Both the position numbers and the translations under genes were made by a program. Below the pieces are notes generated by a model. The model made no database searches. It was not told where the DNA came from and saw only the letters and a program-made list of their open reading frames with translations. From Octopus bimaculoides (taxonomy: Eukaryota): DNA of 41,182 nucleotides. Positions 7,423 through 41,145 of the stretch are shown here, piece by piece (position 1 is the stretch's first letter; each line of letters begins with the position of its first letter). The DNA is taken from assembly GCF_001194135.2 (NCBI RefSeq), contig NC_068986.1:14623492-14664673 (forward strand), in the 5' to 3' direction.

Positions 7423-8170
7423 GGGTGCAGCGAACATATTGTCGTCTGAATTACGCTGACATCTTATTTTAACATATATATTTACCAAAATTGCATAAAA
7501 ATGTCTTGAAATACTAAATGGTAAATTTATTAAATAAAATCACCATTGGCTTCAACCACGGCTTTCGGATGACTTTGAAATCTCCTACAGCTCTTCTCGT
7601 CTCCTTGTTTAAGTTTGTGAATGCTGCCATAATTCTTGCCTTCAGTTCATCTTCGGTGTTACAAAGAATATTGCTGGTCTCTCGCTCAGCTGCGCTCTAC
7701 ACATAATAATCAAGGGGGTTCCAGTCTGGGGAGCTAGGTGGCCATATATTAGGGGTGATGTAGTTTCAGAAATTGTCTGACAGCCATAACAGGTTTCCTC
7801 TGCTTGTATGACATAGTGCAGAGTTCTGTTGCCAGACATAAAGTCTTCCAGCACACACCCTCTTAAACCAGGGCACTACTATCTCTTTCAGGCACTTGAT
7901 GTAGGTTTTCGTGTTGAGTATAAGGGTGTGTGTGAAGATGAATGGAGGCATAAAGTTTCCATCGCTAGTGATCACTCCAAATACCATGATGTTGACTGGA
8001 TGTTTAATTTTCATCACTCTAGGTACAACTTTTAGGGACTCAGATTGACACACAACACTCTGAAATGTTCGTATTGGAGCTTCCGATAGGCATACCAAGC
8101 AGTAAACAATGTCATTTCCAAATTTCTGGTAGAGTGAATTGCGTCATGCTGCGGTTCTCTCACAGACGGT
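7423..8170 (-). mobile_element. Tc1/mariner superfamily, DD37D (maT/mori-type) transposase pseudogene, 3' portion
   Basis: NIMVFGVITSDG...YVWQQNSALCHTS...WLSDNF*NYITPNIWPPSSPDWNPLDYYV*; 37 residues between the second and third catalytic positions (second D mutated to N); end CAGGGTGCAGCG at 7423. Confidence 0.85.
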
Positions 8171-8337: not shown

Positions 8338-8597
8338 TTATATATACGTGTGTGTGTGTGTGTGTGTGAGTGTGTATATATATGAGAACCGCGTAATATA
8401 TGTATATATAAATGTGTGTGTATGCTATCGATCTCTTTATCTATCGATATATTTATCTATTATTTACCTGTCTATCTATCTATCTATCTATCTATTTATT
8501 TGTATATATANNNNNNNNNNNNNNNNNNNNNNNNNNNNNNNNNNNNNNNNNNNNNNNNNNNNNNNNNNNNNNNNNNNNNNNTATATATATATATATA

Positions 8598-21067: not shown

Positions 21068-21989
21068 ANNNNNNNNNNNNNNNNNNNNNNNNNNNNNNNN
21101 NNNNNNNNNNNNNNNNNNNNNNNNNNNNNNNNNNNNNNNNNNNNNNNNNNNNNNNNNNNNNNNNNNNNNNNNNNNNNNNNNNNNNNNNNNNNNNNNNNNN
21201 NNNNNNNNNNNNNNNNNNNNNNNNNNNNNNNNNNNNNNNNNNNNNNNNNNNNNNNNNNNNNNNNNNNNNNNNNNNNNNNNNNNNNNNNNNNNNNNNNNNN
21301 NNNNNNNNNNNNNNNNNNNNNNNNNNNNNNNNNNNNNNNNNNNNNNNNNNNNNNNNNNNNNNNNNNNNNNNNNNNNNNNNNNNNNNNNNNNNNNNNNNNN
21401 NNNNNNNNNNNNNNNNNNNNNNNNNNNNNNNNNNNNNNNNNNNNNNNNNNNNNNNNNNNNNNNNNNNNNNNNNNNNNNNNNNNNNNNNNNNNNNNNNNNN
21501 NNNNNNNNNNNNNNNNNNNNNNNNNNNNNNNNNNNNNNNNNNNNNNNNNNNNNNNNNNNNNNNNNNNNNNNNNNNNNNNNNNNNNNNNNNNNNNNNNNNN
21601 NNNNNNNNNNNNNNNNNNNNNNNNNNNNNNNNNNNNNNNNNNNNNNNNNNNNNNNNNNNNNNNNNNNNNNNNNNNNNNNNNNNNNNNNNNNNNNNNNNNN
21701 NNNNNNNNNNNNNNNNNNNNNNNNNNNNNNNNNNNNNNNNNNNNNNNNNNNNNNNNNNNNNNNNNNNNNNNNNNNNNNNNNNNNNNNNNNNNNNNNNNNN
21801 NNNNNNNNNNNNNNNNNNNNNNNNNNNNNNNNNNNNNNNNNNNNNNNNNNNNNNNNNNNNNNTGCTCGGTAGCAAACCGATTATATAACTTCACGCTGAT
21901 CAGAATTAGCCGATATGGAACGTAACGTTTATATACATACATATACATATATATGTATGTATGTATATATGTATGTACGTATATGTGAG

Positions 21990-22085
21990 CCTCTGTCTGT
22001 GTTTATCCCCACCAGCGTGTGACTCCCTTGTTGGTATTTACGTTCTCGCAACTTAGCTGTTTGGTAAAACATATATTCGCATCGG
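21990..22085 (+). mobile_element. Degenerate SINE family A 3' fragment
   Basis: GTGTTTATCCCC..GGTATTTACGTTCTCGCAACTTAGCTGTTTGG resembles the family A post-microsatellite segment. Confidence 0.5.
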
Positions 22086-22415
22086 AGCAACGCTAACATC
22101 GTCAGCAAGATTTCCGTTACGCGCTGAATATATTATTTTAATTTTCAGTGTGTGTTGAAGTCCTAATTCCCTCTTAACAATTGACAAATGGGTATTGACC
22201 AGCCACAAGTAACTCGAAATGCATCTGTCGTTCCCTTTAGCCACCATGCTCCGATGTGTATCGTGTCGTTCAACACTACGCGTGTATGAAGGATTTTCTG
22301 CAGGTACAAACGACTATATTATGTCTTCTTTACACATTGTAAATGTATTTCCTATGATACACGTACGGCGATGTTAATTTAATTTTCCTTCATTTGTATT
22401 CACTGAGATGCTTAC

Positions 22416-22508
22416 AACGCAGCAAGCTTTCCGCTGTACAGGTCAGTTTCGTCCAATATTTCCTTCCATCCTCATGCGAATTTCCCGGGATGCACGATGC
22501 TGACATGC
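22416..22508 (-). CDS. Candidate 93-nt phase 1-1 internal exon (MSASCIPGNSHEDGRKYWTKLTCTAESLLR)
   Basis: Acceptor GTCTTTCTTCAG, donor GTAAGC, length divisible by 3, one open frame, raised GC; no recognised homologue. Confidence 0.25.
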
Positions 22509-23719
22509 CTGAAGAAAGACGCAATTCATCTGCCGTTCTCGTGAATCATTACTGCGATGTTGTTTGCTTCACTCTTATAGATATTGTTTCTTCAAAAATA
22601 ATGCTTGTGAACAAATTTATCTCACACAACAGCCAGAGCGTGATGAAAAGGGCGTATCCCTATATTAAACAGGGTACACAGATGGTGTAGCGCACTTTTA
22701 TGTGCGTGTATTTATGAGGGCGAGTACGCAATTTTTCCGACTCTGTGCAATTAAGGTTTTGTATGAGACTTCACAATCCGACTAGATGTTATTAGTATTA
22801 CGAACCAAACGACATCAGTTCTCAAACACGATTTACAGTTTTCAACTAAACAAGTTTCTCCAATCATTATGATCATCATGATCATCATCTTGTTGATGAC
22901 GATCGTCATCATTGCTCTCACGTTGTTGTCATAACTGTTGTACTCATTCGTCACTATTTATCTTTCAAACAATTTTTTTGTCTTTTCTATTGTATTTCCT
23001 TTCCATTTCATTTTGCTTATTTAAGTCTTGTCTCGTCTGAATTGTAATAAATAGAAAGGAAGAAAATAGACACAAGTTGTATAAATTTTCAATTAGTCCA
23101 GTGCGATTTTAGATTTATTTAGTTGTTTCTTTTATTTCCTCTTTGGTCGTCATTTGATTTATTTCGATATAGTTTGTGGTATTTGAAAGTACAACGATTG
23201 AGTAACAATGGTTTGCACTAAACAGTCGAAATGTTACCTTAACGTTTGTTAACTATTTATGGGTGTTGAAGGTTAGACAAGTGTCAGTTAGCCTATTCAT
23301 TTCAGCTGTATACACGGAAATAAAGTTTGTTTCTCGCTGTAAAATATCGAGATATTTGAATATCTTATGGCAATATATTTTTACATTGTTCATATTTATT
23401 TGAAGTTCAACACTAAACGCAAAAGTTTGTTTTAACTGTATGTAAATAAACAACACTCACATTAATTTATGCAATAGTTTGATAATTTGGGAACGGACTA
23501 GGAATTGTACAAGCCTAAACAATTAGCTGCTTCCTACTGAAATGTGCTATGCGGCCTCAGGATGAGCAGTGTCATGAGGTATTTAAGCACAAATGCCGCA
23601 ACACCACCAGCTAGTGTAATATTCGTAAACCATTCTCAAATAATACGTTTAATATTATGGACACTGAGCTCGTTGTCCTAATCAATCAGGTGTATGATTC
23701 TGAATATATGAGAACTGAC

Positions 23720-23800
23720 TGTTGTCTTTTTGATACATCTCCTCGGCAGCGTCTTGCTTCTTCTGCCCAATCTTTGTTGTGATGGCAGTCGATTGTATAT
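23720..23800 (-). CDS. Candidate 81-nt exon, phase-compatible with 22416-22508
   Basis: Acceptor TATTATTTCAG, donor GTCAGT; all three frames are open, so the reading frame is ambiguous. Confidence 0.2.
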
Positions 23801-25199
23801 CTGAAATAATAGGCTGATACTAATCAAATACATCGATGTTACAAGACCCGGCATTACCGGCAAAGCTGTCGACACACGCATTGATGTATTTGGGTAAATT
23901 GCATTGTGGAACACATTAAAATCATAGTGGAGTCGATTTTTTGTTTGGATAAAATAAACAGCAGTCAACTACGAAAGACGATTTCATAAAGCGATCAGAA
24001 ACTGCGGTCTTGTACTCTGTTAGCAAATGCTATGTAAGTTTAATAGTGATTGTATTTCTCTCCATTGCATTGTATCTGATTCAGAAATATATATTTTCTG
24101 TCCTGACAAATCGTAAGACATCCTTGGTGAATTCGTTGACAAGGACTAAGCGTTACTCATGCAGATTTTACGAAATAATAGAGAAGTTGTTTCCCATCGA
24201 GTCCATTTCTGTATTTTTTTTGGAGGGAGCGGGGTGAGGGTGGAAGAGTTCTTGTCAGTTACAGAAACGTCTGCTGGTCTTGCTTCGATTCGCAGGATAT
24301 GAACAGTCAAAACACACCGGAATATATTTTGTTTGATGTTTCAACAATTACTCCAACGAATAACCTTGTATGTTATCTTATGGGTACCAACAGAGTCGGT
24401 GTGAACATCGGTTATGATTTAACACGGAAAGTAAATTGTATAAAACATGACTACGAGGTATTTTGACCTACGATCCATCAATTCTTCTACTTCATCTCAT
24501 CATCTGTTTGCCCGTTCACAGAAAGTGCCGTGTATTACTGCTGATTCCCGTTGACGCATTTACAAGAAAAATCCATCATATAACACTTATTTATAGCGCA
24601 ATTCACTTCGTATGTATTATCAATTGTTCACCTTCTATGAATAAGTAATTGTTCCCCTTACATACGTTATAGACGTCTTATTGTCACTACATAATACTTT
24701 CTACCATTGTAGTAATGCAGAGAACTGTCAATAAAATTAATGAGGCATACTAGAATATATGTCCACTCGCAACACCAGAGCAGCAAGCGATGAAATTTAT
24801 GTTAATTCAACTTCGCATTCATTGCATGGACGTCCTCTAAACACCATAAGTAAAAACAAAACCCCACGAAAATGTTCCTATGTGTGCAATTTACCTTCAA
24901 AATGTAGCAATCGAATGCCCTCTAAAGTCACATCGTCTCAGGCAATTTCAAATTATATGTTCCTCTGTTCACTGTAAAAAGGAAAAGTGTTAGATAAAAA
25001 TGAGAAGACATTTTTTTTTATCAAGTATTCGACTTAACTTCTTAAGGTAGAGTGTTAGCTTCTTGTACCGACATCCGACAAATCGAGTCTATTCAAGGTG
25101 CGTTTCCATCCGGGAGTTTCTGGATAACAGTTACAAGAGTATCACCATCAAAGCTGTATGTATGTATGCATGTATGTATATATGAATACATATATATAT

Positions 25200-25231
<32 letters not shown>

Positions 25232-25281
25232 GTATATATATATGTGCATAGATATGTATATGTATATACATGTATATATAT

Positions 25282-25852
25282 ATAAAGTGAAGTATATTGC
25301 CACTTAAATGTGGCTGACCCCTAGGGGTGGATGTTACTGTTGCTTTTAGCCCCAGGAGGACATCTCCTCCAGCTGGTTTATCGACACACTTCTGTGTCCT
25401 GTTTGTTTTGCCAAGGGAATTTATCCCTCCCATCGAGATCTGTAGCACGAACGGACCCGGGTTTCAGGGTTATTTCCCTTCGTCGGCATCCGATAGCGAC
25501 CGATCTGCGATGACAGAGATACATTCTTGGCAATCTTATGTACCTTTTTCCAGTGAAATTCTTCACTGATATCGAGAAAGTGAAAACAAGCAAAGTTAAT
25601 TCTCTAAATTAGGTATTAACAGTAACTGCACGATAAAGTGAAGTATATTGCCACTTTAATGTGGCTGACCCCTAGTGGGGGTCAGCCACAGCCACAGAAG
25701 TGTGTCGATAAGCCAGCTGGAGGAGATGTCCTCCTGGGGCTAAAAGCAACAGTAACATCCACCCCTAGGGGTCAGCCACATTTAAGTGGCAATATACTTC
25801 ACTTTATCGTGCAGTTACTGTTAATACCTAATTTAGAGAATTAACATTGCTT
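25282..25852 (-). mobile_element. Hammerhead-containing small element: terminally redundant 351-nt monomer (minus strand) plus an inverted 160-nt junction-spanning copy (plus strand), between (AT)n tracts
   Basis: 43-bp direct repeat at 25282-25324 and 25633-25675 (1 mismatch); 25693-25806 is the reverse complement of 25283-25396; 25765-25852 is the reverse complement of 25588-25675; 13-bp fold-back at about 25660-25690. Confidence 0.85.
25448..25492 (-). ncRNA. Minimal type I hammerhead ribozyme motif HHR3, apparently intact; predicted cleavage after GUC (between 25454 and 25453)
   Basis: CGGATG-CCGACGA-AGGG[AAATAA]CCCT-GAAA-C[CCGG]G-TC-CGTTCG; 6-bp stem I including two G.U pairs, perfect 4-bp stem II, palindromic stem-loop III, U4C core. 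Confidence 0.85.
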
Positions 25853-26083
25853 ATATATATATATATATATATATATACAAGAAATGAGGGCAGGGAATCG
25901 TCAATTAATAATAGAATTAACAATTAACAATTTTGCCAAGTAGTTCAGTATGAAATAAACCTTTAGAATCAGTAGTTCTTTGACTGCTGCTGTTTCTGAA
26001 TTTTCAGTATGTTGGAGAAGCAACTCAATTGCTAATCCCTTATATTTATGATATATATATATATGTTTGTGTGTGTATGTATT

Positions 26084-26123
<40 letters not shown>

Positions 26124-27424
26124 TATACACTATATGTATATATGTATGTATTTATATGTGTGTTTGCAAGTCTGAGTGTGAGAAAGAAAGAGAGTGAGTG
26201 AGAGAAACAGAGAAAGAGAGTGGAATTGATGTGTGTGATTCCCTTATATTCTTACGTGAAGAGCAGCGACCAGTAATTCACATAAATCGCAAATACCCGA
26301 ACGAGAAAGATGGAGCAAATAGACAAATCGAGTCCAAAACAGATACCGACTATAAAATCGACTATAATACTTTTACTCTGTTACCATACAATTTAAATAT
26401 TAAAGTATAAAAATAAAAACAAAAGTTTCGGGCGTAGTGAGCCATGTATGTGACAATATTAACAAACATGCAATCCATATTATCATTTAATCACCGATTT
26501 CTTACCGAATCACTATCAGAATATCTGTTTGACATGACAGGACACTCGCTTACTAAGTTGAATGATAAATGCGTACAGACGTAAACCAGTCCAACTGTAA
26601 AGATTGTATGTAGATGAAAGAATAATCAAGCTGCAGAAAGAAGATAAATAGATAGCTAGTGGAAAATAACATATCCTTTGAGACAGGCATATATACAAGG
26701 ACAAAACTAACAAAGATTTATTCTTTTTTTTTTTTTGGTTTTGTTTCGTTACTGTTGAAGAGAACGTCTATTCAGCCTTCTGCATTCAGAATGGAGATTT
26801 CAGTCTCTGAAGACAAGTAACAGCGTAGAATTAGAATCATCAGTTACGGGATTGTTGTATACATTCTAACCGAAAAATTGACCAGGAAGCCACATGGGTT
26901 GATTGTAAACTCTTTATTCAGATATTTTTCTTTGATTTTATATTTATTTCATTCATCGTATGTGCGTGTGTGTGTGTGTGTGTATGTGTGTGTGTGTGTG
27001 TGTGTCTGTATGTGTGCATGTGTGTATGCGTGTATTTATATATATACATATNNNNNNNNNNNNNNNNNNNNNNNNNNNNNNNNNNNNNNNNNNNNNNNNN
27101 NNNNNNNNNNNNNNNNNNNNNNNNNNNNNNNNNNNNNNNNNNNNNNNNNNNNNNNNNNNNNNNNNNNNNNNNNNNNNNNNNNNNNNNNNNNNNNNNNNNN
27201 NNNNNNNNNNNNNNNNNNNNNNNNNNNNNNNNNNNNNNNNNNNNNNNNNNNNNNNNNNNNNNNNNNNNNNNNNNNNNNNNNNNNNNNNNNNNNNNNNNNN
27301 NNNNNNNNNNNNNNNNNNNNNNNNNNNNNNNNNNNNNNNNNNNNNNNNNNNNNNNNNNNNNNNNNNNNNNNNNNNNNNNNNNNNNNNNNNNNNNNNNNNN
27401 NNNNNNNNNNNNNNNNNNNNNNNN

Positions 27425-37789: not shown

Positions 37790-38690
37790 TGAATTGGGTT
37801 CTATGGTAAACTTTTGGGAATCTAGCATGGAAATCCTTTTCTTCCCAATCACATAACCTTTCTCCTTTTTATGATTTTCAACTTTATTTGGCGTTTTGGT
37901 CTCCCCGTGTCCTACTGTGACACTAGCAGCTCTTAAACTTTCTTCCCAATTACCTACGTGGGAGATTATGTCTACTCCAGAAAACTCCATGCAGTCTTCT
38001 ACTGATATTAACCCTCTTCCACATTCCTTTATAATCTTGCAACTCCAGCCTTAATTGAGGTCCTCCATTCATATTGATTCCTTCCTATGTCTTTATCTAG
38101 ATTCACTAATTCAGATTTTGACTAATGTACAAAAGATGCTGAATATATAAGTAATGGTACTGCTCATGTATTTACAACCCTCACTAGATTTGAACCATTT
38201 AACTTTGACTTCACTAGCTTCCTCATCTTTCCGGTTTACTCCCCAGTTTTCATTTTAAGTCTATAGTCAGTACTCTGTCAGATTCTAACATTCGTAGATG
38301 CTTATGATTCTTTCCTTTTTCCAGTGATTTAATGTCTGGCCATCTGGTTTTTGGATACCTTCATTGCTGACTATCGGTCACTTGTTTATGGTTAATATTG
38401 CACACCTATCTATGCTAATTTTCATACCTGTATCTTTGCTGAACAGACTTACAGCTTGCATTAAGGAATCTCGCCCTTTTTTTATTCTTGCTAAAAAGCT
38501 TCAGATCATCCATGTACAGCTAATGGTTAATGTTTGCTTAACTATTTCTGAAATGGTACCCTGGGAACAGATCTACTTACCATGTATTCGTGCTAAAGCT
38601 AATTCTCTTAAATTGTCTGCAATACTGAATATGCTCAAACATTCACTTATTTATGAGTGCGGAATCATCTCATAGACTTTCTTATAATCT
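37790..38690 (-). mobile_element. R4/Dong-clade reverse transcriptase fragment, pseudogenised
   Basis: Minus strand FSKDTGMKISIDRCAILTI...KMRKLVKSKLNGSNLVRVVNT*AVPLLIYSA...KECGRGLISVEDCME; abuts (ATT)n at about 38695-38728. Confidence 0.75.
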
Positions 38691-38727
38691 ATCCTATTAT
38701 TATTATCAGTATTATTGTTATCATTAT

Positions 38728-38925: not shown

Positions 38926-40359
38926 TATTGTCATTAGTATTGTTGTTGTTACCATTATAAGCAGAAATCTTTGCCATATTTATTCTACTTCGTCATGCAT
39001 TGAGTTCAAATCCTATGAGATAAATTTGCAGATTGTCATCGTTCCGGAGACAATGAAATGAAAATCCTACAAATAAAAATAGCTGTTCCTTTCTGTCTGC
39101 GTACGCATGGACGAAATAATGACTATTAACCATTCGTCACTAGACGCGGAGTCTTTTAACTTGTCCAAACTTTATTTGAGTCAAATATTGGATTGTAATT
39201 CTCACCGGGCCGTCCTCTACGACTGATAAACCCTGCAACAGAGACAGAAAAATACATGTCTTAGTTGTAAAAATTTCGTCTACAAGAATATAATAAATAG
39301 CAGAGAAGCAACCGGTATAGAAGAGTTATAGTCAAACAAGATGTCCGACCTCTGGTGAAAAACAATATAATTTTCTATTTTGTACCTCGTCATACGATAA
39401 GGAAAAAAAAAATAATACTAAAAAACATGCATATAAATATATAGTAAACCAAAAAAATATCCGTTGCTGATATTTCGTCTCTATGTTTTATGTCAATGCT
39501 CACAGAACAAACATACAGAGAGTTTTCACAGTTGCTAATCCTATTTCTGTTTCTTTACAAATAAAGCTCATACAAGAATTGAGAGATCGGCGACGTAGGC
39601 AGTTCCAAGTGTTAAACAAATGACAAATAAGATTGCGGTGTTTTTTGTTGGTTTTGTTTTTTGCTTTTATTATCTTCCTTTTACTGGATGTGTTGTACGA
39701 TTTTATTTTCATTGTTTTTCATTTGACAGTAGAGGGTCAGGCGCGGAGTGTGGCTCTCTTATTTCTCTTTGGCATCAGTTAATAATAAATTAAACTGCCT
39801 CGTGTTTCCCTTCCTGCAAAATAAATGAATGTATATATATATATATATNNNNNNNNNNNNNNNNNNNNNNNNNNNNNNNNNNNNNNNNNNNNNNNNNNNN
39901 NNNNNNNNNNNNNNNNNNNNNNNNNNNNNNNNNNNNNNNNNNNNNNNNNNNNNNNNNNNNNNNNNNNNNNNNNNNNNNNNNNNNNNNNNNNNNNATATAT
40001 ATAACATGTGAACCCCTATGTATCTGTATTTATGTAAGTAGCGTTAGTGTGTGTGAATGTCAAATGAGAAAAGCGAGTTAAAGCAACAAAACGAAGGTTG
40101 CCGATAACAAGAAGCAAGAAGTGCTTATAAAATTTGTTTTTAGAATAATTAACACTGTTTTGCGACAAGGACAAGGTAACTTGAAGCGAAAGCGAAAGTA
40201 GAATCAAGAAAAACAATGAAATGGAAGAATATGAGGTGGAACAAAATGGAAGAGAGGGTGGAAACGGGTGGAAAAGGGTGGAAAAGGGAATGAGGTGGCG
40301 GAGAAAAGGAACGAAAGACGTGAAAAGAATACGAAGGTGAAACAGAAGCTGAAGGAAAA

Positions 40360-40800
40360 AACAACAGGAGAAATGAAGAGTAAGAAGAGGAAGAAGTCGC
40401 AAAAGAAGAGGAAGAAGAAGAAAAAGAAGAAGAAGAAGAGGTGGAGGAAGTAGAAACATGAAGGAGAGGAAGAAGAAGGAAGAGAAGAAGAGTAAGAAAA
40501 GGAGTAGAAAAGGAAGAAGCAGAAGAAAAGAAGGAGAAGATGAAGAAGAAGAAGAAGAAGAAGAAGAAGAAGAAGAAGAAGAAGAAGAAGAAGAAGAAGA
40601 AGAAGAAGAAGAAGACGACGAATTTGAAGATGATGAAGGTGACGGTGGTGGTATTGGTGCTGATGGAGTAGTAATGGCGATAGTGGTGGCGGTGTTAGTG
40701 GTAGTGTTTTGGTGGTGTTGCTGACGATGATGGGATGATGGTCGTGATGACAACCGATGATGATAATAATGATAATGATGATGATGACGACGACGATAAT
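40360..40800. repeat. Compound trinucleotide tract (GAA)n-(GGT)n-(GAT)n
   Basis: Direct reading; source of the poly-E, poly-K and poly-S pseudo-ORFs. Confidence 0.95.
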
Positions 40801-40904
40801 GATATTGGAATATCAGATTGTAAAAATAACACAGCGATTTGAAGGATGAAAGTGTACAAAGTTAGAAAAGATAACGTAAAAATTATGATGCAAAGAGACA
40901 GCCA

Positions 40905-41145
40905 GACTCAGGGAGAGAGAGTGAGAGAGAGGGAGAGGGAGAGAGAGAGAGAGTTAATCAGTAGGTAGATAGACAACATAGATAGGTAGATAGACATGTT
41001 GAGGGATAGATAGCTTGATACATAGAGGGAGAAAGAGAGAGAAGGAGAGAAATAGAAAGGTAGATATATAGATAGATAGATTGATAGATAGATAGACAGA
41101 AAGACAGACAGACAGACAGATAGACAGACATATGGATAAATAGAC

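What the first reader, a model, noticed from the sequence alone, without database searches (positions are those of the whole stretch)
25282..25852. Retrozyme-like locus: 351-nt terminally redundant hammerhead monomer plus an inverted copy that reads through the monomer junction
Seen: on the minus strand the element starts and ends with the same 43 nt (351-nt period) and carries one apparently intact minimal hammerhead (25448-25492). On the plus strand, 25693-25852 is a contiguous 160-nt piece running from the monomer 3' end across the junction into the monomer 5' start. The switch point has a 13-bp fold-back at the element's own CCCCTAGGGG palindrome and CCACA microhomology. There is no coding capacity and both flanks are (AT)n. 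Established: metazoan non-LTR retrozymes are monomers of a few hundred nt with minimal type I hammerheads, form circular RNAs and are thought to be mobilised by Penelope-like elements. Inference: this is a genomic fossil of reverse transcription on a circular or multimeric RNA with template switching. I do not know of a description of this family in cephalopods.
Basis: partly seen in the sequence, partly recalled or inferred. Interest (0 to 1): 0.88.

Follow-up and report, generated by a model that had tools for sequence, protein, structure and literature searches.

The report
Hammerhead-bearing Penelope-type retroelement insertion, octopus
This is one dead copy of a small non-coding "retrozyme"-type mobile element, probably from an octopus genome, carrying a hammerhead self-cleaving RNA motif with one core base changed and inserted into a (TA)n microsatellite in the tandem-plus-inverted layout typical of Penelope-like retrotransposon integration; it is a new member of a known kind, not a new mechanism.

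Summary
The repeat geometry is real. A 351-nt unit (25282-25632) is followed by 49 nt of a second unit. After a 13-bp fold-back comes a 160-nt inverted piece (25693-25852) that crosses the unit junction. (TA)n lies on both flanks and nothing in the unit codes for protein.

The hammerhead at 25492-25448 (minus strand) has the canonical metazoan type I layout and is unlikely by chance (about 0.007-0.03 comparable sites per simulated window). It is not intact. Core position 4 is C instead of the conserved U, and Rfam reports no hammerhead even at E<=10. It is the only hammerhead in the locus, so the locus cannot release a unit-length RNA.

Partial tandem, inverted 5'-truncated copy next to the upstream unit, a short extension at one end and a microsatellite target together match the published signature of Penelope-like element (PLE) integration. 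A circular RNA template is therefore allowed but not required. One diverged second copy exists as a 54-aa Octopus bimaculoides "protein". No further DNA copies could be reached.

Best reading: a dead-on-arrival insertion of a PLE-dependent, non-LTR-retrozyme-type element, made by twin-primed reverse transcription of a longer-than-unit RNA. Moderate to low interest.

The parts
25173..25281 (.). Left flank: degenerate (TA)n/(TG)n microsatellite, the presumed target
   Evidence: TRF period 2, 74% matches; sequence
25282..25632 (-). Full 351-nt unit. The sense strand (the one carrying the hammerhead) is the minus strand: unit position s1 = 25632 and s351 = 25282. 44% GC, non-coding.
   Evidence: Period-351 direct repeat. 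Circular MFE -111.7 kcal/mol against -82.8 +/- 5.2 for shuffles, z = -5.5, 0 of 200 shuffles as stable. No Pfam family above its cut-off.
25448..25492 (-). Type I hammerhead motif. Helix I is 25492-25487 / 25453-25448 (6 bp, two of them G-U). Core: C3 25486, C4 25485 (canonical U), G5 A6 C7 G8 A9 25484-25480. Helix II is AGGG/CCCU with loop AAAUAA. G12 A13 A14 are 25465-25463. Helix III is A-U and C-G with loop CCGG (the palindrome ACCCGGGU). Predicted cleavage is after C17, between 25454 and 25453.
   Evidence: Direct reading. It is the only descriptor hit in the window at <=1 core mismatch, and there is none with a perfect core. Chance 0.007-0.033 per window. No Rfam hit. The monomeric HHR fold is -5.6 against an MFE of -15.5 kcal/mol; the intermolecular ACCCGGGU duplex is -16.3.
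25633..25677 (-). Partial upstream unit (about s307-s351), joined head-to-tail to the full unit at the junction CACTTTAT|CGTGCAG. It ends in the element's CCCCTAGGGG palindrome.
   Evidence: Direct repeat D3, 46/49 identical; three-way comparison
25660..25692 (.). Switch point: perfect 13-bp fold-back (25660-25672 / 25678-25690, loop TAGTG), then the GC filler / GCCACA duplication (25685-25696)
   Evidence: D7 and sequence; TRF CAGCCA x2.5 at 25683-25697
25693..25807 (+). Inverted 5'-truncated copy, unit positions s237-s351, 114/115 identical to the main copy. Its one difference matches the second family member P0001.
   Evidence: I1; difference list; tblastn of P0001, AYRHT against VYRHT
25808..25852 (+). 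45-nt continuation of the inverted copy across the same junction into s1-s45 (a 'tail' at one end only), 44/45 identical to the main copy
   Evidence: I2. Compare the 30-40-bp one-sided tail of PLE insertions (PMC8557442).
25853..25877 (.). Right flank: perfect (TA)n
   Evidence: TRF 25852-25877, 13 copies, 100%

Best explanation
The locus is a single, dead-on-arrival insertion of a short non-coding retroelement of the metazoan non-LTR retrozyme type. It is a hammerhead-bearing unit of 351 nt, mobilised in trans by the reverse transcriptase and GIY-YIG endonuclease of a Penelope-like element, and it sits in a (TA)n microsatellite of what is probably an octopus genome.

Proposed steps (all inferred; none shown here):
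1. The endonuclease nicks both strands of the (TA)n target.
2. The 3'-OH of the plus strand primes an antisense cDNA that starts at unit position 351. This cDNA runs through one full unit, crosses the unit junction and stops about 45 nt into the next unit, at the CCCCTAGGGG palindrome (25282 to about 25677).
3. The 3'-OH of the minus strand primes a second antisense cDNA at unit position 45. This one also crosses the junction, and it stops at position 237 (25852 back to 25693).
4. The first cDNA snaps back on its own palindrome for 13 nt, pairs by CACA microhomology with the end of the second cDNA, and is extended on it. This gives the head-to-head inverted structure, in the manner of 'twin priming'.

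Both cDNAs carry the identical, precise junction, so the RNA template already contained it. It was either a multimeric read-through transcript of a tandem source array or a circularised unit; the data cannot tell which.

This copy's hammerhead has C at core position 4 and is the only hammerhead in the locus. The locus itself should therefore neither self-cleave efficiently nor release a unit-length or circular RNA.

In an intact source array the ribozyme would work as a dimer. Two neighbouring units would pair through the palindrome ACCCGGGU to build a stable helix III and cut after GUC. The 351-nt product would then be ligated by the tRNA ligase RtcB, as shown for mussel and axolotl retrozymes.
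For: - Geometry and identities.
- Hammerhead layout (helix I 6 bp, helix II 4 bp, helix III 2 bp plus palindromic tetraloop) equals the 'canonical metazoan type I' description in PMC4209133 and the 'invertebrate' helix III in PMC7229834.
- The motif is the only site in the window and is rare by chance.
- Unit size of 351 nt and 44% GC lie within the published retrozyme range of 150-450 bp and below the <45-50% GC limit; the mussel and axolotl constructs are 353 nt.
- Fold z = -5.5.
- No ORF or Pfam family above its cut-off in the unit or its flanks, and no tRNA.
- PLE insertion hallmarks from PMC8557442: partial tandem, inverted 5'-truncated copy adjacent to the upstream repeat, a one-sided 30-40-bp tail, (TA)n target preference, head-to-tail insertions of non-autonomous elements, and PLEs present in Octopus spp.
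- 30 Penelope families among the 31 putatively active Penelope-like TE families tabulated for O. vulgaris.
- Retrozymes are related to PLE pLTRs, and monomer derivatives are common.
- A second diverged family member in Octopus bimaculoides, UniProt A0A0L8IHK6, 47/55 aa over two frames.
- The hammerhead site (s179/s180) is contiguous in the main copy and neither insertion end lies at it, so the template was not a linear self-cleaved monomer.
Against: - Only one locus and one protein-level relative could be examined. Copy number, end variability and the family consensus are unknown.
- The hammerhead fails the full-core test (C4) and gets no Rfam score.
- No PLE reverse transcriptase or GIY-YIG ORF is in the window, and similarity of the unit to an octopus PLE pLTR could not be tested.
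- The one-sided extension is 45 nt, a little longer than the published 30-40 bp.
- No target-site duplication can be read in (TA)n.
- The window is a short-read draft with 11 gaps, and no independent assembly of the locus was found.
- MFE folding does not itself predict the hammerhead or the dimer.
- A fold-back with microhomology is also the signature of DNA-replication template switching.
Confidence: 0.6

Rival explanations
1. The template was specifically a covalently closed 351-nt circular RNA, made by hammerhead cleavage plus ligation and copied by rolling reverse transcription.
For: Both cDNAs cross the same precise junction. Neither end of the insertion lies at the hammerhead cleavage site, and that site is contiguous in the main copy. 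Retrozyme RNAs of this size are circular in mussel, coral and axolotl (PMC7229834). The unit folds very stably.
Against: A multimeric linear transcript of a tandem array explains the same facts. Non-autonomous PLE-dependent elements give head-to-tail insertions without any ribozyme (PMC8557442). No RNA data were available.
Confidence: 0.25
2. The unit is simply the pseudo-LTR (pLTR) of an autonomous Penelope-like element. The locus is then an extremely 5'-truncated ordinary PLE insertion, and no separate non-autonomous family exists.
For: PLE pLTRs carry hammerheads, most PLE insertions are 5'-truncated down to a single terminal repeat, and retrozymes and pLTRs are sequence relatives.
Against: The two junctions in the locus join unit end directly to unit start with no ORF between them. 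The hammerhead is of the canonical type I kind found in retrozymes, not the minimal PLE kind with helix II of 7-8 bp and no helix III. No reverse transcriptase or endonuclease remnant lies in the flanks.
Confidence: 0.15
3. The inverted piece arose later at the DNA level. A fold-back or replication template switch at the palindrome, or an inversion within a short tandem array, produced it, and reverse transcription was not involved.
For: A 13-bp fold-back exactly at a palindrome, a 6-nt duplication and 4-nt microhomology are classic marks of replicative template switching.
Against: The stretch s237-351 followed by s1-45 is not contiguous anywhere in the present locus. At its two private positions the inverted copy differs from the main copy, and one of them agrees with the unlinked copy P0001. 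The layout equals the usual PLE insertion form.
Confidence: 0.12
4. Assembly artefact: two different genomic copies of the repeat, or a fold-back chimeric read, were joined in a short-read draft.
For: The window has 11 N gaps. PLE tandem/inverted structures are known to trouble short-read assemblies. No independent record of the locus was found.
Against: The switch region contains unique sequence that is not templated by either arm (TAGTGGGGG, GC filler). The element's own palindrome is only 12 nt, too short to mislead an assembler. The locus lies inside one gap-free contig, 21863-27051.
Confidence: 0.07
5. The hammerhead-like motif is a chance resemblance inside an unrelated repeat.
For: One core mismatch; no Rfam score; MFE folding does not give the hammerhead.
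Against: Expected 0.007-0.033 such sites per window. The motif sits in a unit with retrozyme size, composition and PLE-type insertion layout. The motif region is conserved at the amino-acid level in the second copy ([13 protein letters not shown]).
Confidence: 0.03

Closest known systems
Metazoan non-LTR retrozymes (Cervera and de la Pena 2020, PMC7229834), for example the roughly 353-nt units of Mytilus galloprovincialis and Ambystoma mexicanum
   Same: Unit length (351 nt), GC below 45%, no ORF, and a type I hammerhead with helix I of 6 bp, helix II of 4 bp with an A-rich loop, and a 2-bp helix III with a palindromic tetraloop that should act as a dimer. It also has a very stable predicted fold and a head-to-tail junction.
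   Different: Here there are only 1.14 direct units and one hammerhead. Core position 4 is C. An inverted partial copy is attached. No RNA evidence exists. The host is a cephalopod, not covered by those studies.
Penelope-like element insertions and their non-autonomous derivatives (Craig et al. 2021, PMC8557442; Li et al. 2026 preprint, 10.64898/2026.07.22.740005)
   Same: Partial tandem (pLTR-like), an inverted 5'-truncated copy abutting the upstream repeat, a short one-sided tail, insertion into (TA)n, and a hammerhead in the repeat.
   Different: No RT/GIY-YIG ORF. The repeat unit is the whole element. The tail is 45 nt rather than 30-40 nt. The hammerhead is canonical type I, not the minimal PLE variant.
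L1 'twin priming' inversions (Ostertag and Kazazian 2001; cited from my own knowledge)
   Same: Two cDNAs primed from the two target strands and joined head-to-head with microhomology, which gives an inverted 5' part.
   Different: A different retrotransposon class and enzyme. Here the template is multimeric or circular, so both cDNAs overlap in sequence content, and a palindrome snap-back precedes the join.
Schistosoma Sm-alpha and newt satellite 2 hammerhead repeats (cited from my own knowledge and from PMC4209133)
   Same: SINE- or satellite-like repeats of about 330 nt with a type I hammerhead whose weak helix III favours dimeric cleavage.
   Different: No sequence similarity was tested. 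Those occur as long arrays or many dispersed copies with an intact CUGAUGA box.

Membership tests
Hammerhead ribozyme, type I | Complete conserved core: C3 U4 G5 A6 N7 G8 A9, G12 A13 A14, A15.1-U16.1, H17 | tested here: not met
   All positions are canonical except position 4, which is C (25485). Mutations in the CUGA U-turn give low activity (PMC9901934).
Hammerhead ribozyme, type I | Three helices around the core with an open helix I. For the metazoan form: helix I about 6 bp, helix II 4 bp, helix III 1-2 bp with a 2-4-nt palindromic loop. | tested here: met
   6 bp, 4 bp, and 2 bp plus a CCGG loop. The criterion comes from PMC4209133.
Hammerhead ribozyme, type I | Scores with the Rfam covariance models (Hammerhead_1 and related) | tested here: not met
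   No hit at the gathering score nor at E<=10 on 900 nt and on 91 nt
Hammerhead ribozyme, type I | Self-cleavage after H17 | not testable with these tools
   Needs in vitro transcription of monomer and dimer constructs
Metazoan non-LTR retrozyme | Tandem repeats (two or more units of 150-450 bp), each with a type I hammerhead | tested here: not met
   This locus has 1.14 direct units plus 0.45 inverted, and one hammerhead. It fits the 'monomer derivative' class of Li et al. 2026. Arrays elsewhere in the genome could not be searched.
Metazoan non-LTR retrozyme | Non-coding, low GC (below 45-50%), no LTR/PBS/PPT | tested here: met
   44% GC; stops in all frames and no Pfam family above its cut-off
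Metazoan non-LTR retrozyme | Multicopy family in the host genome | tested here: inconclusive
   One further diverged copy was seen, only as the O. bimaculoides protein A0A0L8IHK6. There is none in the window, and the genome is not searchable here.
Metazoan non-LTR retrozyme | Expressed as unit-length linear and circular RNA | not testable with these tools
   No RNA data
Penelope-like-element-type insertion | Partial head-to-tail tandem, plus an inverted 5'-truncated copy next to the upstream repeat | tested here: met
   definition from PMC8557442
Penelope-like-element-type insertion | One-sided 30-40-bp tail | tested here: inconclusive
   A 45-nt extension (s1-45) sits at the outer end of the inverted copy only. 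The length is slightly outside the published range, and the nature of published tails was not compared at sequence level.
Penelope-like-element-type insertion | Microsatellite, especially (TA)n, target | tested here: met
   TRF; PMC8557442
Penelope-like-element-type insertion | RT plus GIY-YIG ORF (autonomous element), or sequence similarity to the end of an autonomous PLE (non-autonomous element) | tested here: not met
   No such ORF or motif lies in the flanks or the window. Similarity to octopus PLE termini is not testable here.

The most novel reading that the evidence does not exclude
The locus preserves, at base resolution, how a PLE enzyme integrates a hammerhead circRNA: internal priming on a closed 351-nt circle from both target strands, more than one turn of rolling reverse transcription, palindrome snap-back and a microhomology join. 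In addition, C4 may be the functional consensus of an octopus hammerhead family, which would make it a natural active U4C core variant.
Probability: 0.08. Interest if true: 0.7.

Novelty: new member of a known kind. Interest (0 to 1): 0.3.

Why it matters
Non-LTR retrozymes are thought to spread through circular RNAs using PLE enzymes, but the integration step has not been worked out. A locus with both ends, both junctions and the switch point readable gives a concrete model, twin priming on a longer-than-unit template, which a genome-wide survey of this family in octopus could test.

It would also add cephalopods to the hosts of this element class. On its own, one degenerate copy changes nothing fundamental, because every structural feature has a published precedent.

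Tried and rejected
- Rfam at the gathering score and at E<=10 gave no ribozyme. The miRNA-like hits are microsatellite or inverted-repeat hairpins.
- blastn of the element against the window found no other copy.
- Translated-frame searches to harvest other copies from protein databases: the 83-aa frame gave one Octopus bimaculoides hit. The six-frame concatenated query failed, with 8000 word candidates and none scoring. The junction-spanning 72-aa frame gave nothing. The exhaustive representative search gave the same protein plus three unrelated repetitive proteins.
- DNA for that protein is not on record. Three ORFs of the locus, including one across the fold-back, are not on record in any other assembly.
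- Exact-pattern scans of metagenome, viral and prokaryotic genome collections gave one chance match, L001, with no hammerhead box.
- tRNA-derived SINE: rejected, no tRNA.
- MITE or foldback DNA transposon: rejected, because the inverted repeats are not terminal and the two ends differ (s351 against s45).
- Coding element: rejected.
- MFE folding of the hammerhead or of a dimeric transcript does not reproduce the active fold. This is expected for ribozymes with a weak helix III and tells nothing either way.

Full report
**Observation**

- A direct repeat of period 351 links 25282-25330 to 25633-25681.
- Two inverted pairs, 25282-25396 / 25693-25807 (115 nt, 99%) and 25588-25681 / 25759-25852 (94 nt, 96%), show what 25693-25852 is. 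It is one contiguous reverse-complement copy of the last 115 nt of the unit followed by its first 45 nt, 158/160 identical.

I number the unit on the strand that carries the hammerhead, which is the minus strand: s1 = 25632 and s351 = 25282.
- The main copy runs from about s307 to s351 and then through s1-s351 (25677 down to 25282).
- The inverted copy is s237-s351 followed by s1-s45 (25693 up to 25852).

Between the two copies lie three features:
- a perfect 13-bp fold-back, 25660-25672 / 25678-25690, with loop TAGTG, centred on the element's own ACCCCTAGGGGT palindrome;
- a GCCACA GCCACA duplication;
- resumption of homology at CACAGAAG (25693), so the secure microhomology is CACA.

The flanks are (TA)n-type microsatellites: 25173-25284 (degenerate) and 25852-25877 (perfect (TA)13). 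All six frames of the unit carry stops, the longest open stretch is 83 aa, and no Pfam family passes its cut-off in the unit or its flanks. There is no tRNA-like part and no second copy in the window.

**The hammerhead**

On the minus strand, 25492-25448 reads CGGAUG-CCGACGA-AGGG-AAAUAA-CCCU-GAAA-C-CCGG-G-UC|CGUUCG.
- This gives helix I of 6 bp, helix II of 4 bp with an A-rich hexaloop, G12 A13 A14, and a helix III of two pairs closed by the palindromic tetraloop CCGG. The cleavage triplet is GUC, with the predicted cut between 25454 and 25453.
- This is the 'canonical metazoan type I' architecture: helix I 6 bp, helix II 4 bp, helix III 1-2 bp with a 2-4-nt palindromic loop (PMC4209133). It also matches the two-pair-plus-tetraloop helix III described for invertebrate retrozymes (PMC7229834).
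- It differs from the minimal PLE variant, which has helix II of 7-8 bp and no helix III.
- My descriptor scan finds this as the only site on either strand of the window with at most one core mismatch, and finds no site with a perfect core.
- In 150 simulated windows, such sites occur 0.033 times per window, and 0.007 times with helices as good as these. The motif is therefore not a chance resemblance.

The hammerhead is nevertheless not intact.
- Core position 4 is C (25485) where U is conserved. This U belongs to the CUGA uridine turn. In comprehensive single and double mutagenesis, all changes in that turn except the C3:G8 swap gave low activity (PMC9901934).
- Rfam reports no hammerhead at the gathering score, or at E<=10 on 900 nt or on 91 nt.
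- As a monomer, the hammerhead fold (-5.6 kcal/mol) loses to an alternative fold (-15.5). An intermolecular ACCCGGGU x ACCCGGGU helix III is worth -16.3 kcal/mol. This fits the known dimeric mode of such ribozymes, but MFE folding of a dimeric transcript does not predict it.
- It is the only hammerhead in the locus. Neither the 49-nt partial unit nor the inverted piece includes s141-s185. The locus therefore cannot excise a unit-length RNA.

**The unit as a whole**

The unit is 351 nt with 44% GC. Folded as a circle it reaches -111.7 kcal/mol, against -82.8 +/- 5.2 for dinucleotide shuffles (z = -5.5, 0 of 200 shuffles as stable). Size, composition, lack of coding capacity and compact folding all match published non-LTR retrozymes: 150-450 bp, GC below 45-50%, with mussel and axolotl constructs of 353 nt (PMC7229834).

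**Relatives and host**

- A translated frame of the unit hits one database protein, UniProt A0A0L8IHK6, a 54-aa 'uncharacterized protein' of Octopus bimaculoides.
- That protein maps to 25331-25497 in two frames separated by a 5-nt indel, 47/55 aa identical, and includes the hammerhead region ([13 protein letters not shown]). It is therefore another, diverged copy of the family, and the window is probably from this octopus or a close relative.
- At the single position where the main and inverted copies differ within s237-s351, the inverted copy agrees with this unlinked copy.
- The protein cannot reveal the base at hammerhead position 4, because both alternatives encode Ser.
- Every other route to more copies failed. 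The collections on hand hold no cephalopod DNA.

**Comparison with known insertion architectures**

Craig et al. 2021 (PMC8557442) describe the standard form of Penelope-like element insertions:
- a copy preceded by a partial tandem copy (the pseudo-LTR);
- often an inverted 5'-truncated copy directly adjacent at the 5' end;
- a 30-40-bp 'tail' at only one end;
- a strong bias for microsatellite targets, (TA)n for Naiads, which occur in Octopus spp.;
- for non-autonomous relatives, multicopy head-to-tail insertions.

The locus reproduces each of these. The partial unit lies upstream, the inverted 5'-truncated copy abuts it, a 45-nt extension sits at the outer end of the inverted copy only, and (TA)n lies on both sides.

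Further context from the literature:
- A table of putatively active TE families in O. vulgaris lists 31 Penelope-like families, 30 of them Penelope (PMC13282606).
- The giant squid genome paper already lists 235 Hammerhead_1 loci (PMC6962438).
- I found no dedicated description of this element class in cephalopods in the library.

**Mechanism (inferred)**

- The plus strand of 25282-25677 and the minus strand of 25852-25693 are both antisense to the hammerhead strand. Each also starts at a (TA)n flank.
- The simplest reading is that two cDNAs were primed from the two nicked target strands ('twin priming'). One started at s351 and the other at s45.
- Both run through the identical, precise junction CACTTTAT|CGTGCAG. 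The junction therefore most likely pre-existed in the template, which was a multimeric transcript of a tandem array or a ligated circle. Two independent end-to-end jumps are a less likely source.
- The hammerhead cleavage site (s179/s180) is contiguous in the main copy and is not an insertion end. This excludes a linear self-cleaved monomer as the template.
- The join is explained by snap-back of the first cDNA on its palindrome (13 nt), followed by CACA pairing with the 3' end of the second cDNA and extension on it.
- Nothing here separates a circular from a multimeric template.

**Rivals**

- The strong circRNA version remains possible (0.25) but is not required.
- A plain 5'-truncated PLE pseudo-LTR (0.15) is disfavoured by the direct end-to-start junctions without an ORF and by the canonical rather than minimal hammerhead.
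- DNA-level fold-back or template switching (0.12) fits the switch-point marks. However, s237-351 followed by s1-45 is not contiguous anywhere in the locus, and the inverted copy has its own variants.
- Misassembly (0.07) cannot be excluded in a gapped short-read draft. The switch region does contain unique, untemplated sequence and lies within one gap-free contig.
- A chance motif is very unlikely (0.03).

**Verdict**

This is a retrozyme-type, PLE-dependent element copy, and the template was longer than one unit. The striking tandem/inverted architecture is the ordinary, published footprint of PLE integration, and this copy is a dead monomer derivative. I rate it a new member of a known kind, of modest interest. 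Its value is as a well-resolved example that motivates a genome-wide survey of the family in octopus.

Noticed in passing
window 38000-38700, minus strand: Stop-riddled remnant of a non-LTR (LINE-like) reverse transcriptase, with the motif LYMDDLKLFSK. By eye it is not a Penelope-type RT. It lies 13 kb from the locus.
   Followed up: partly
window 7766-8098, minus strand: A 110-aa ORF that by eye resembles the C-terminal part of a Tc1/mariner DDE transposase (WQQNSALCHTSR). Pfam gave no hit at E<=0.01.
   Followed up: partly
window 25282-25852: A read-through transcript of the locus would fold into a near-perfect double-stranded RNA stem of about 115 bp (MFE -342 kcal/mol, z = -29). This is also the cause of the spurious Rfam 'MIR904' hit. 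Such a stem is a plausible ADAR-editing or small-RNA substrate in a cephalopod.
   Followed up: no
window 40000-41000: The plus strand is strongly purine-rich (GC skew 0.63, AT skew 0.44), with GAA/GGA-type repeats. The opposite strand gives a long Ser/Leu low-complexity ORF (40016-40753).
   Followed up: no
whole window (gaps at 8511, 11899, 16176, 17616, 21069, 27052, 29256, 32919, 34721, 35487, 39849): Eleven N gaps (3396 N in total), many of those I looked at flanked by (AT)n/(GT)n-type microsatellite. The window is a short-read draft of a microsatellite-rich eukaryotic genome.
   Followed up: no
L001 630-650 (JGI metagenome contig Ga0182021_10960850): The exact 21-nt match to the helix II / GAAAC part of the motif is a chance hit. 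No CUGANGA box lies upstream and the context is unrelated.
   Followed up: yes
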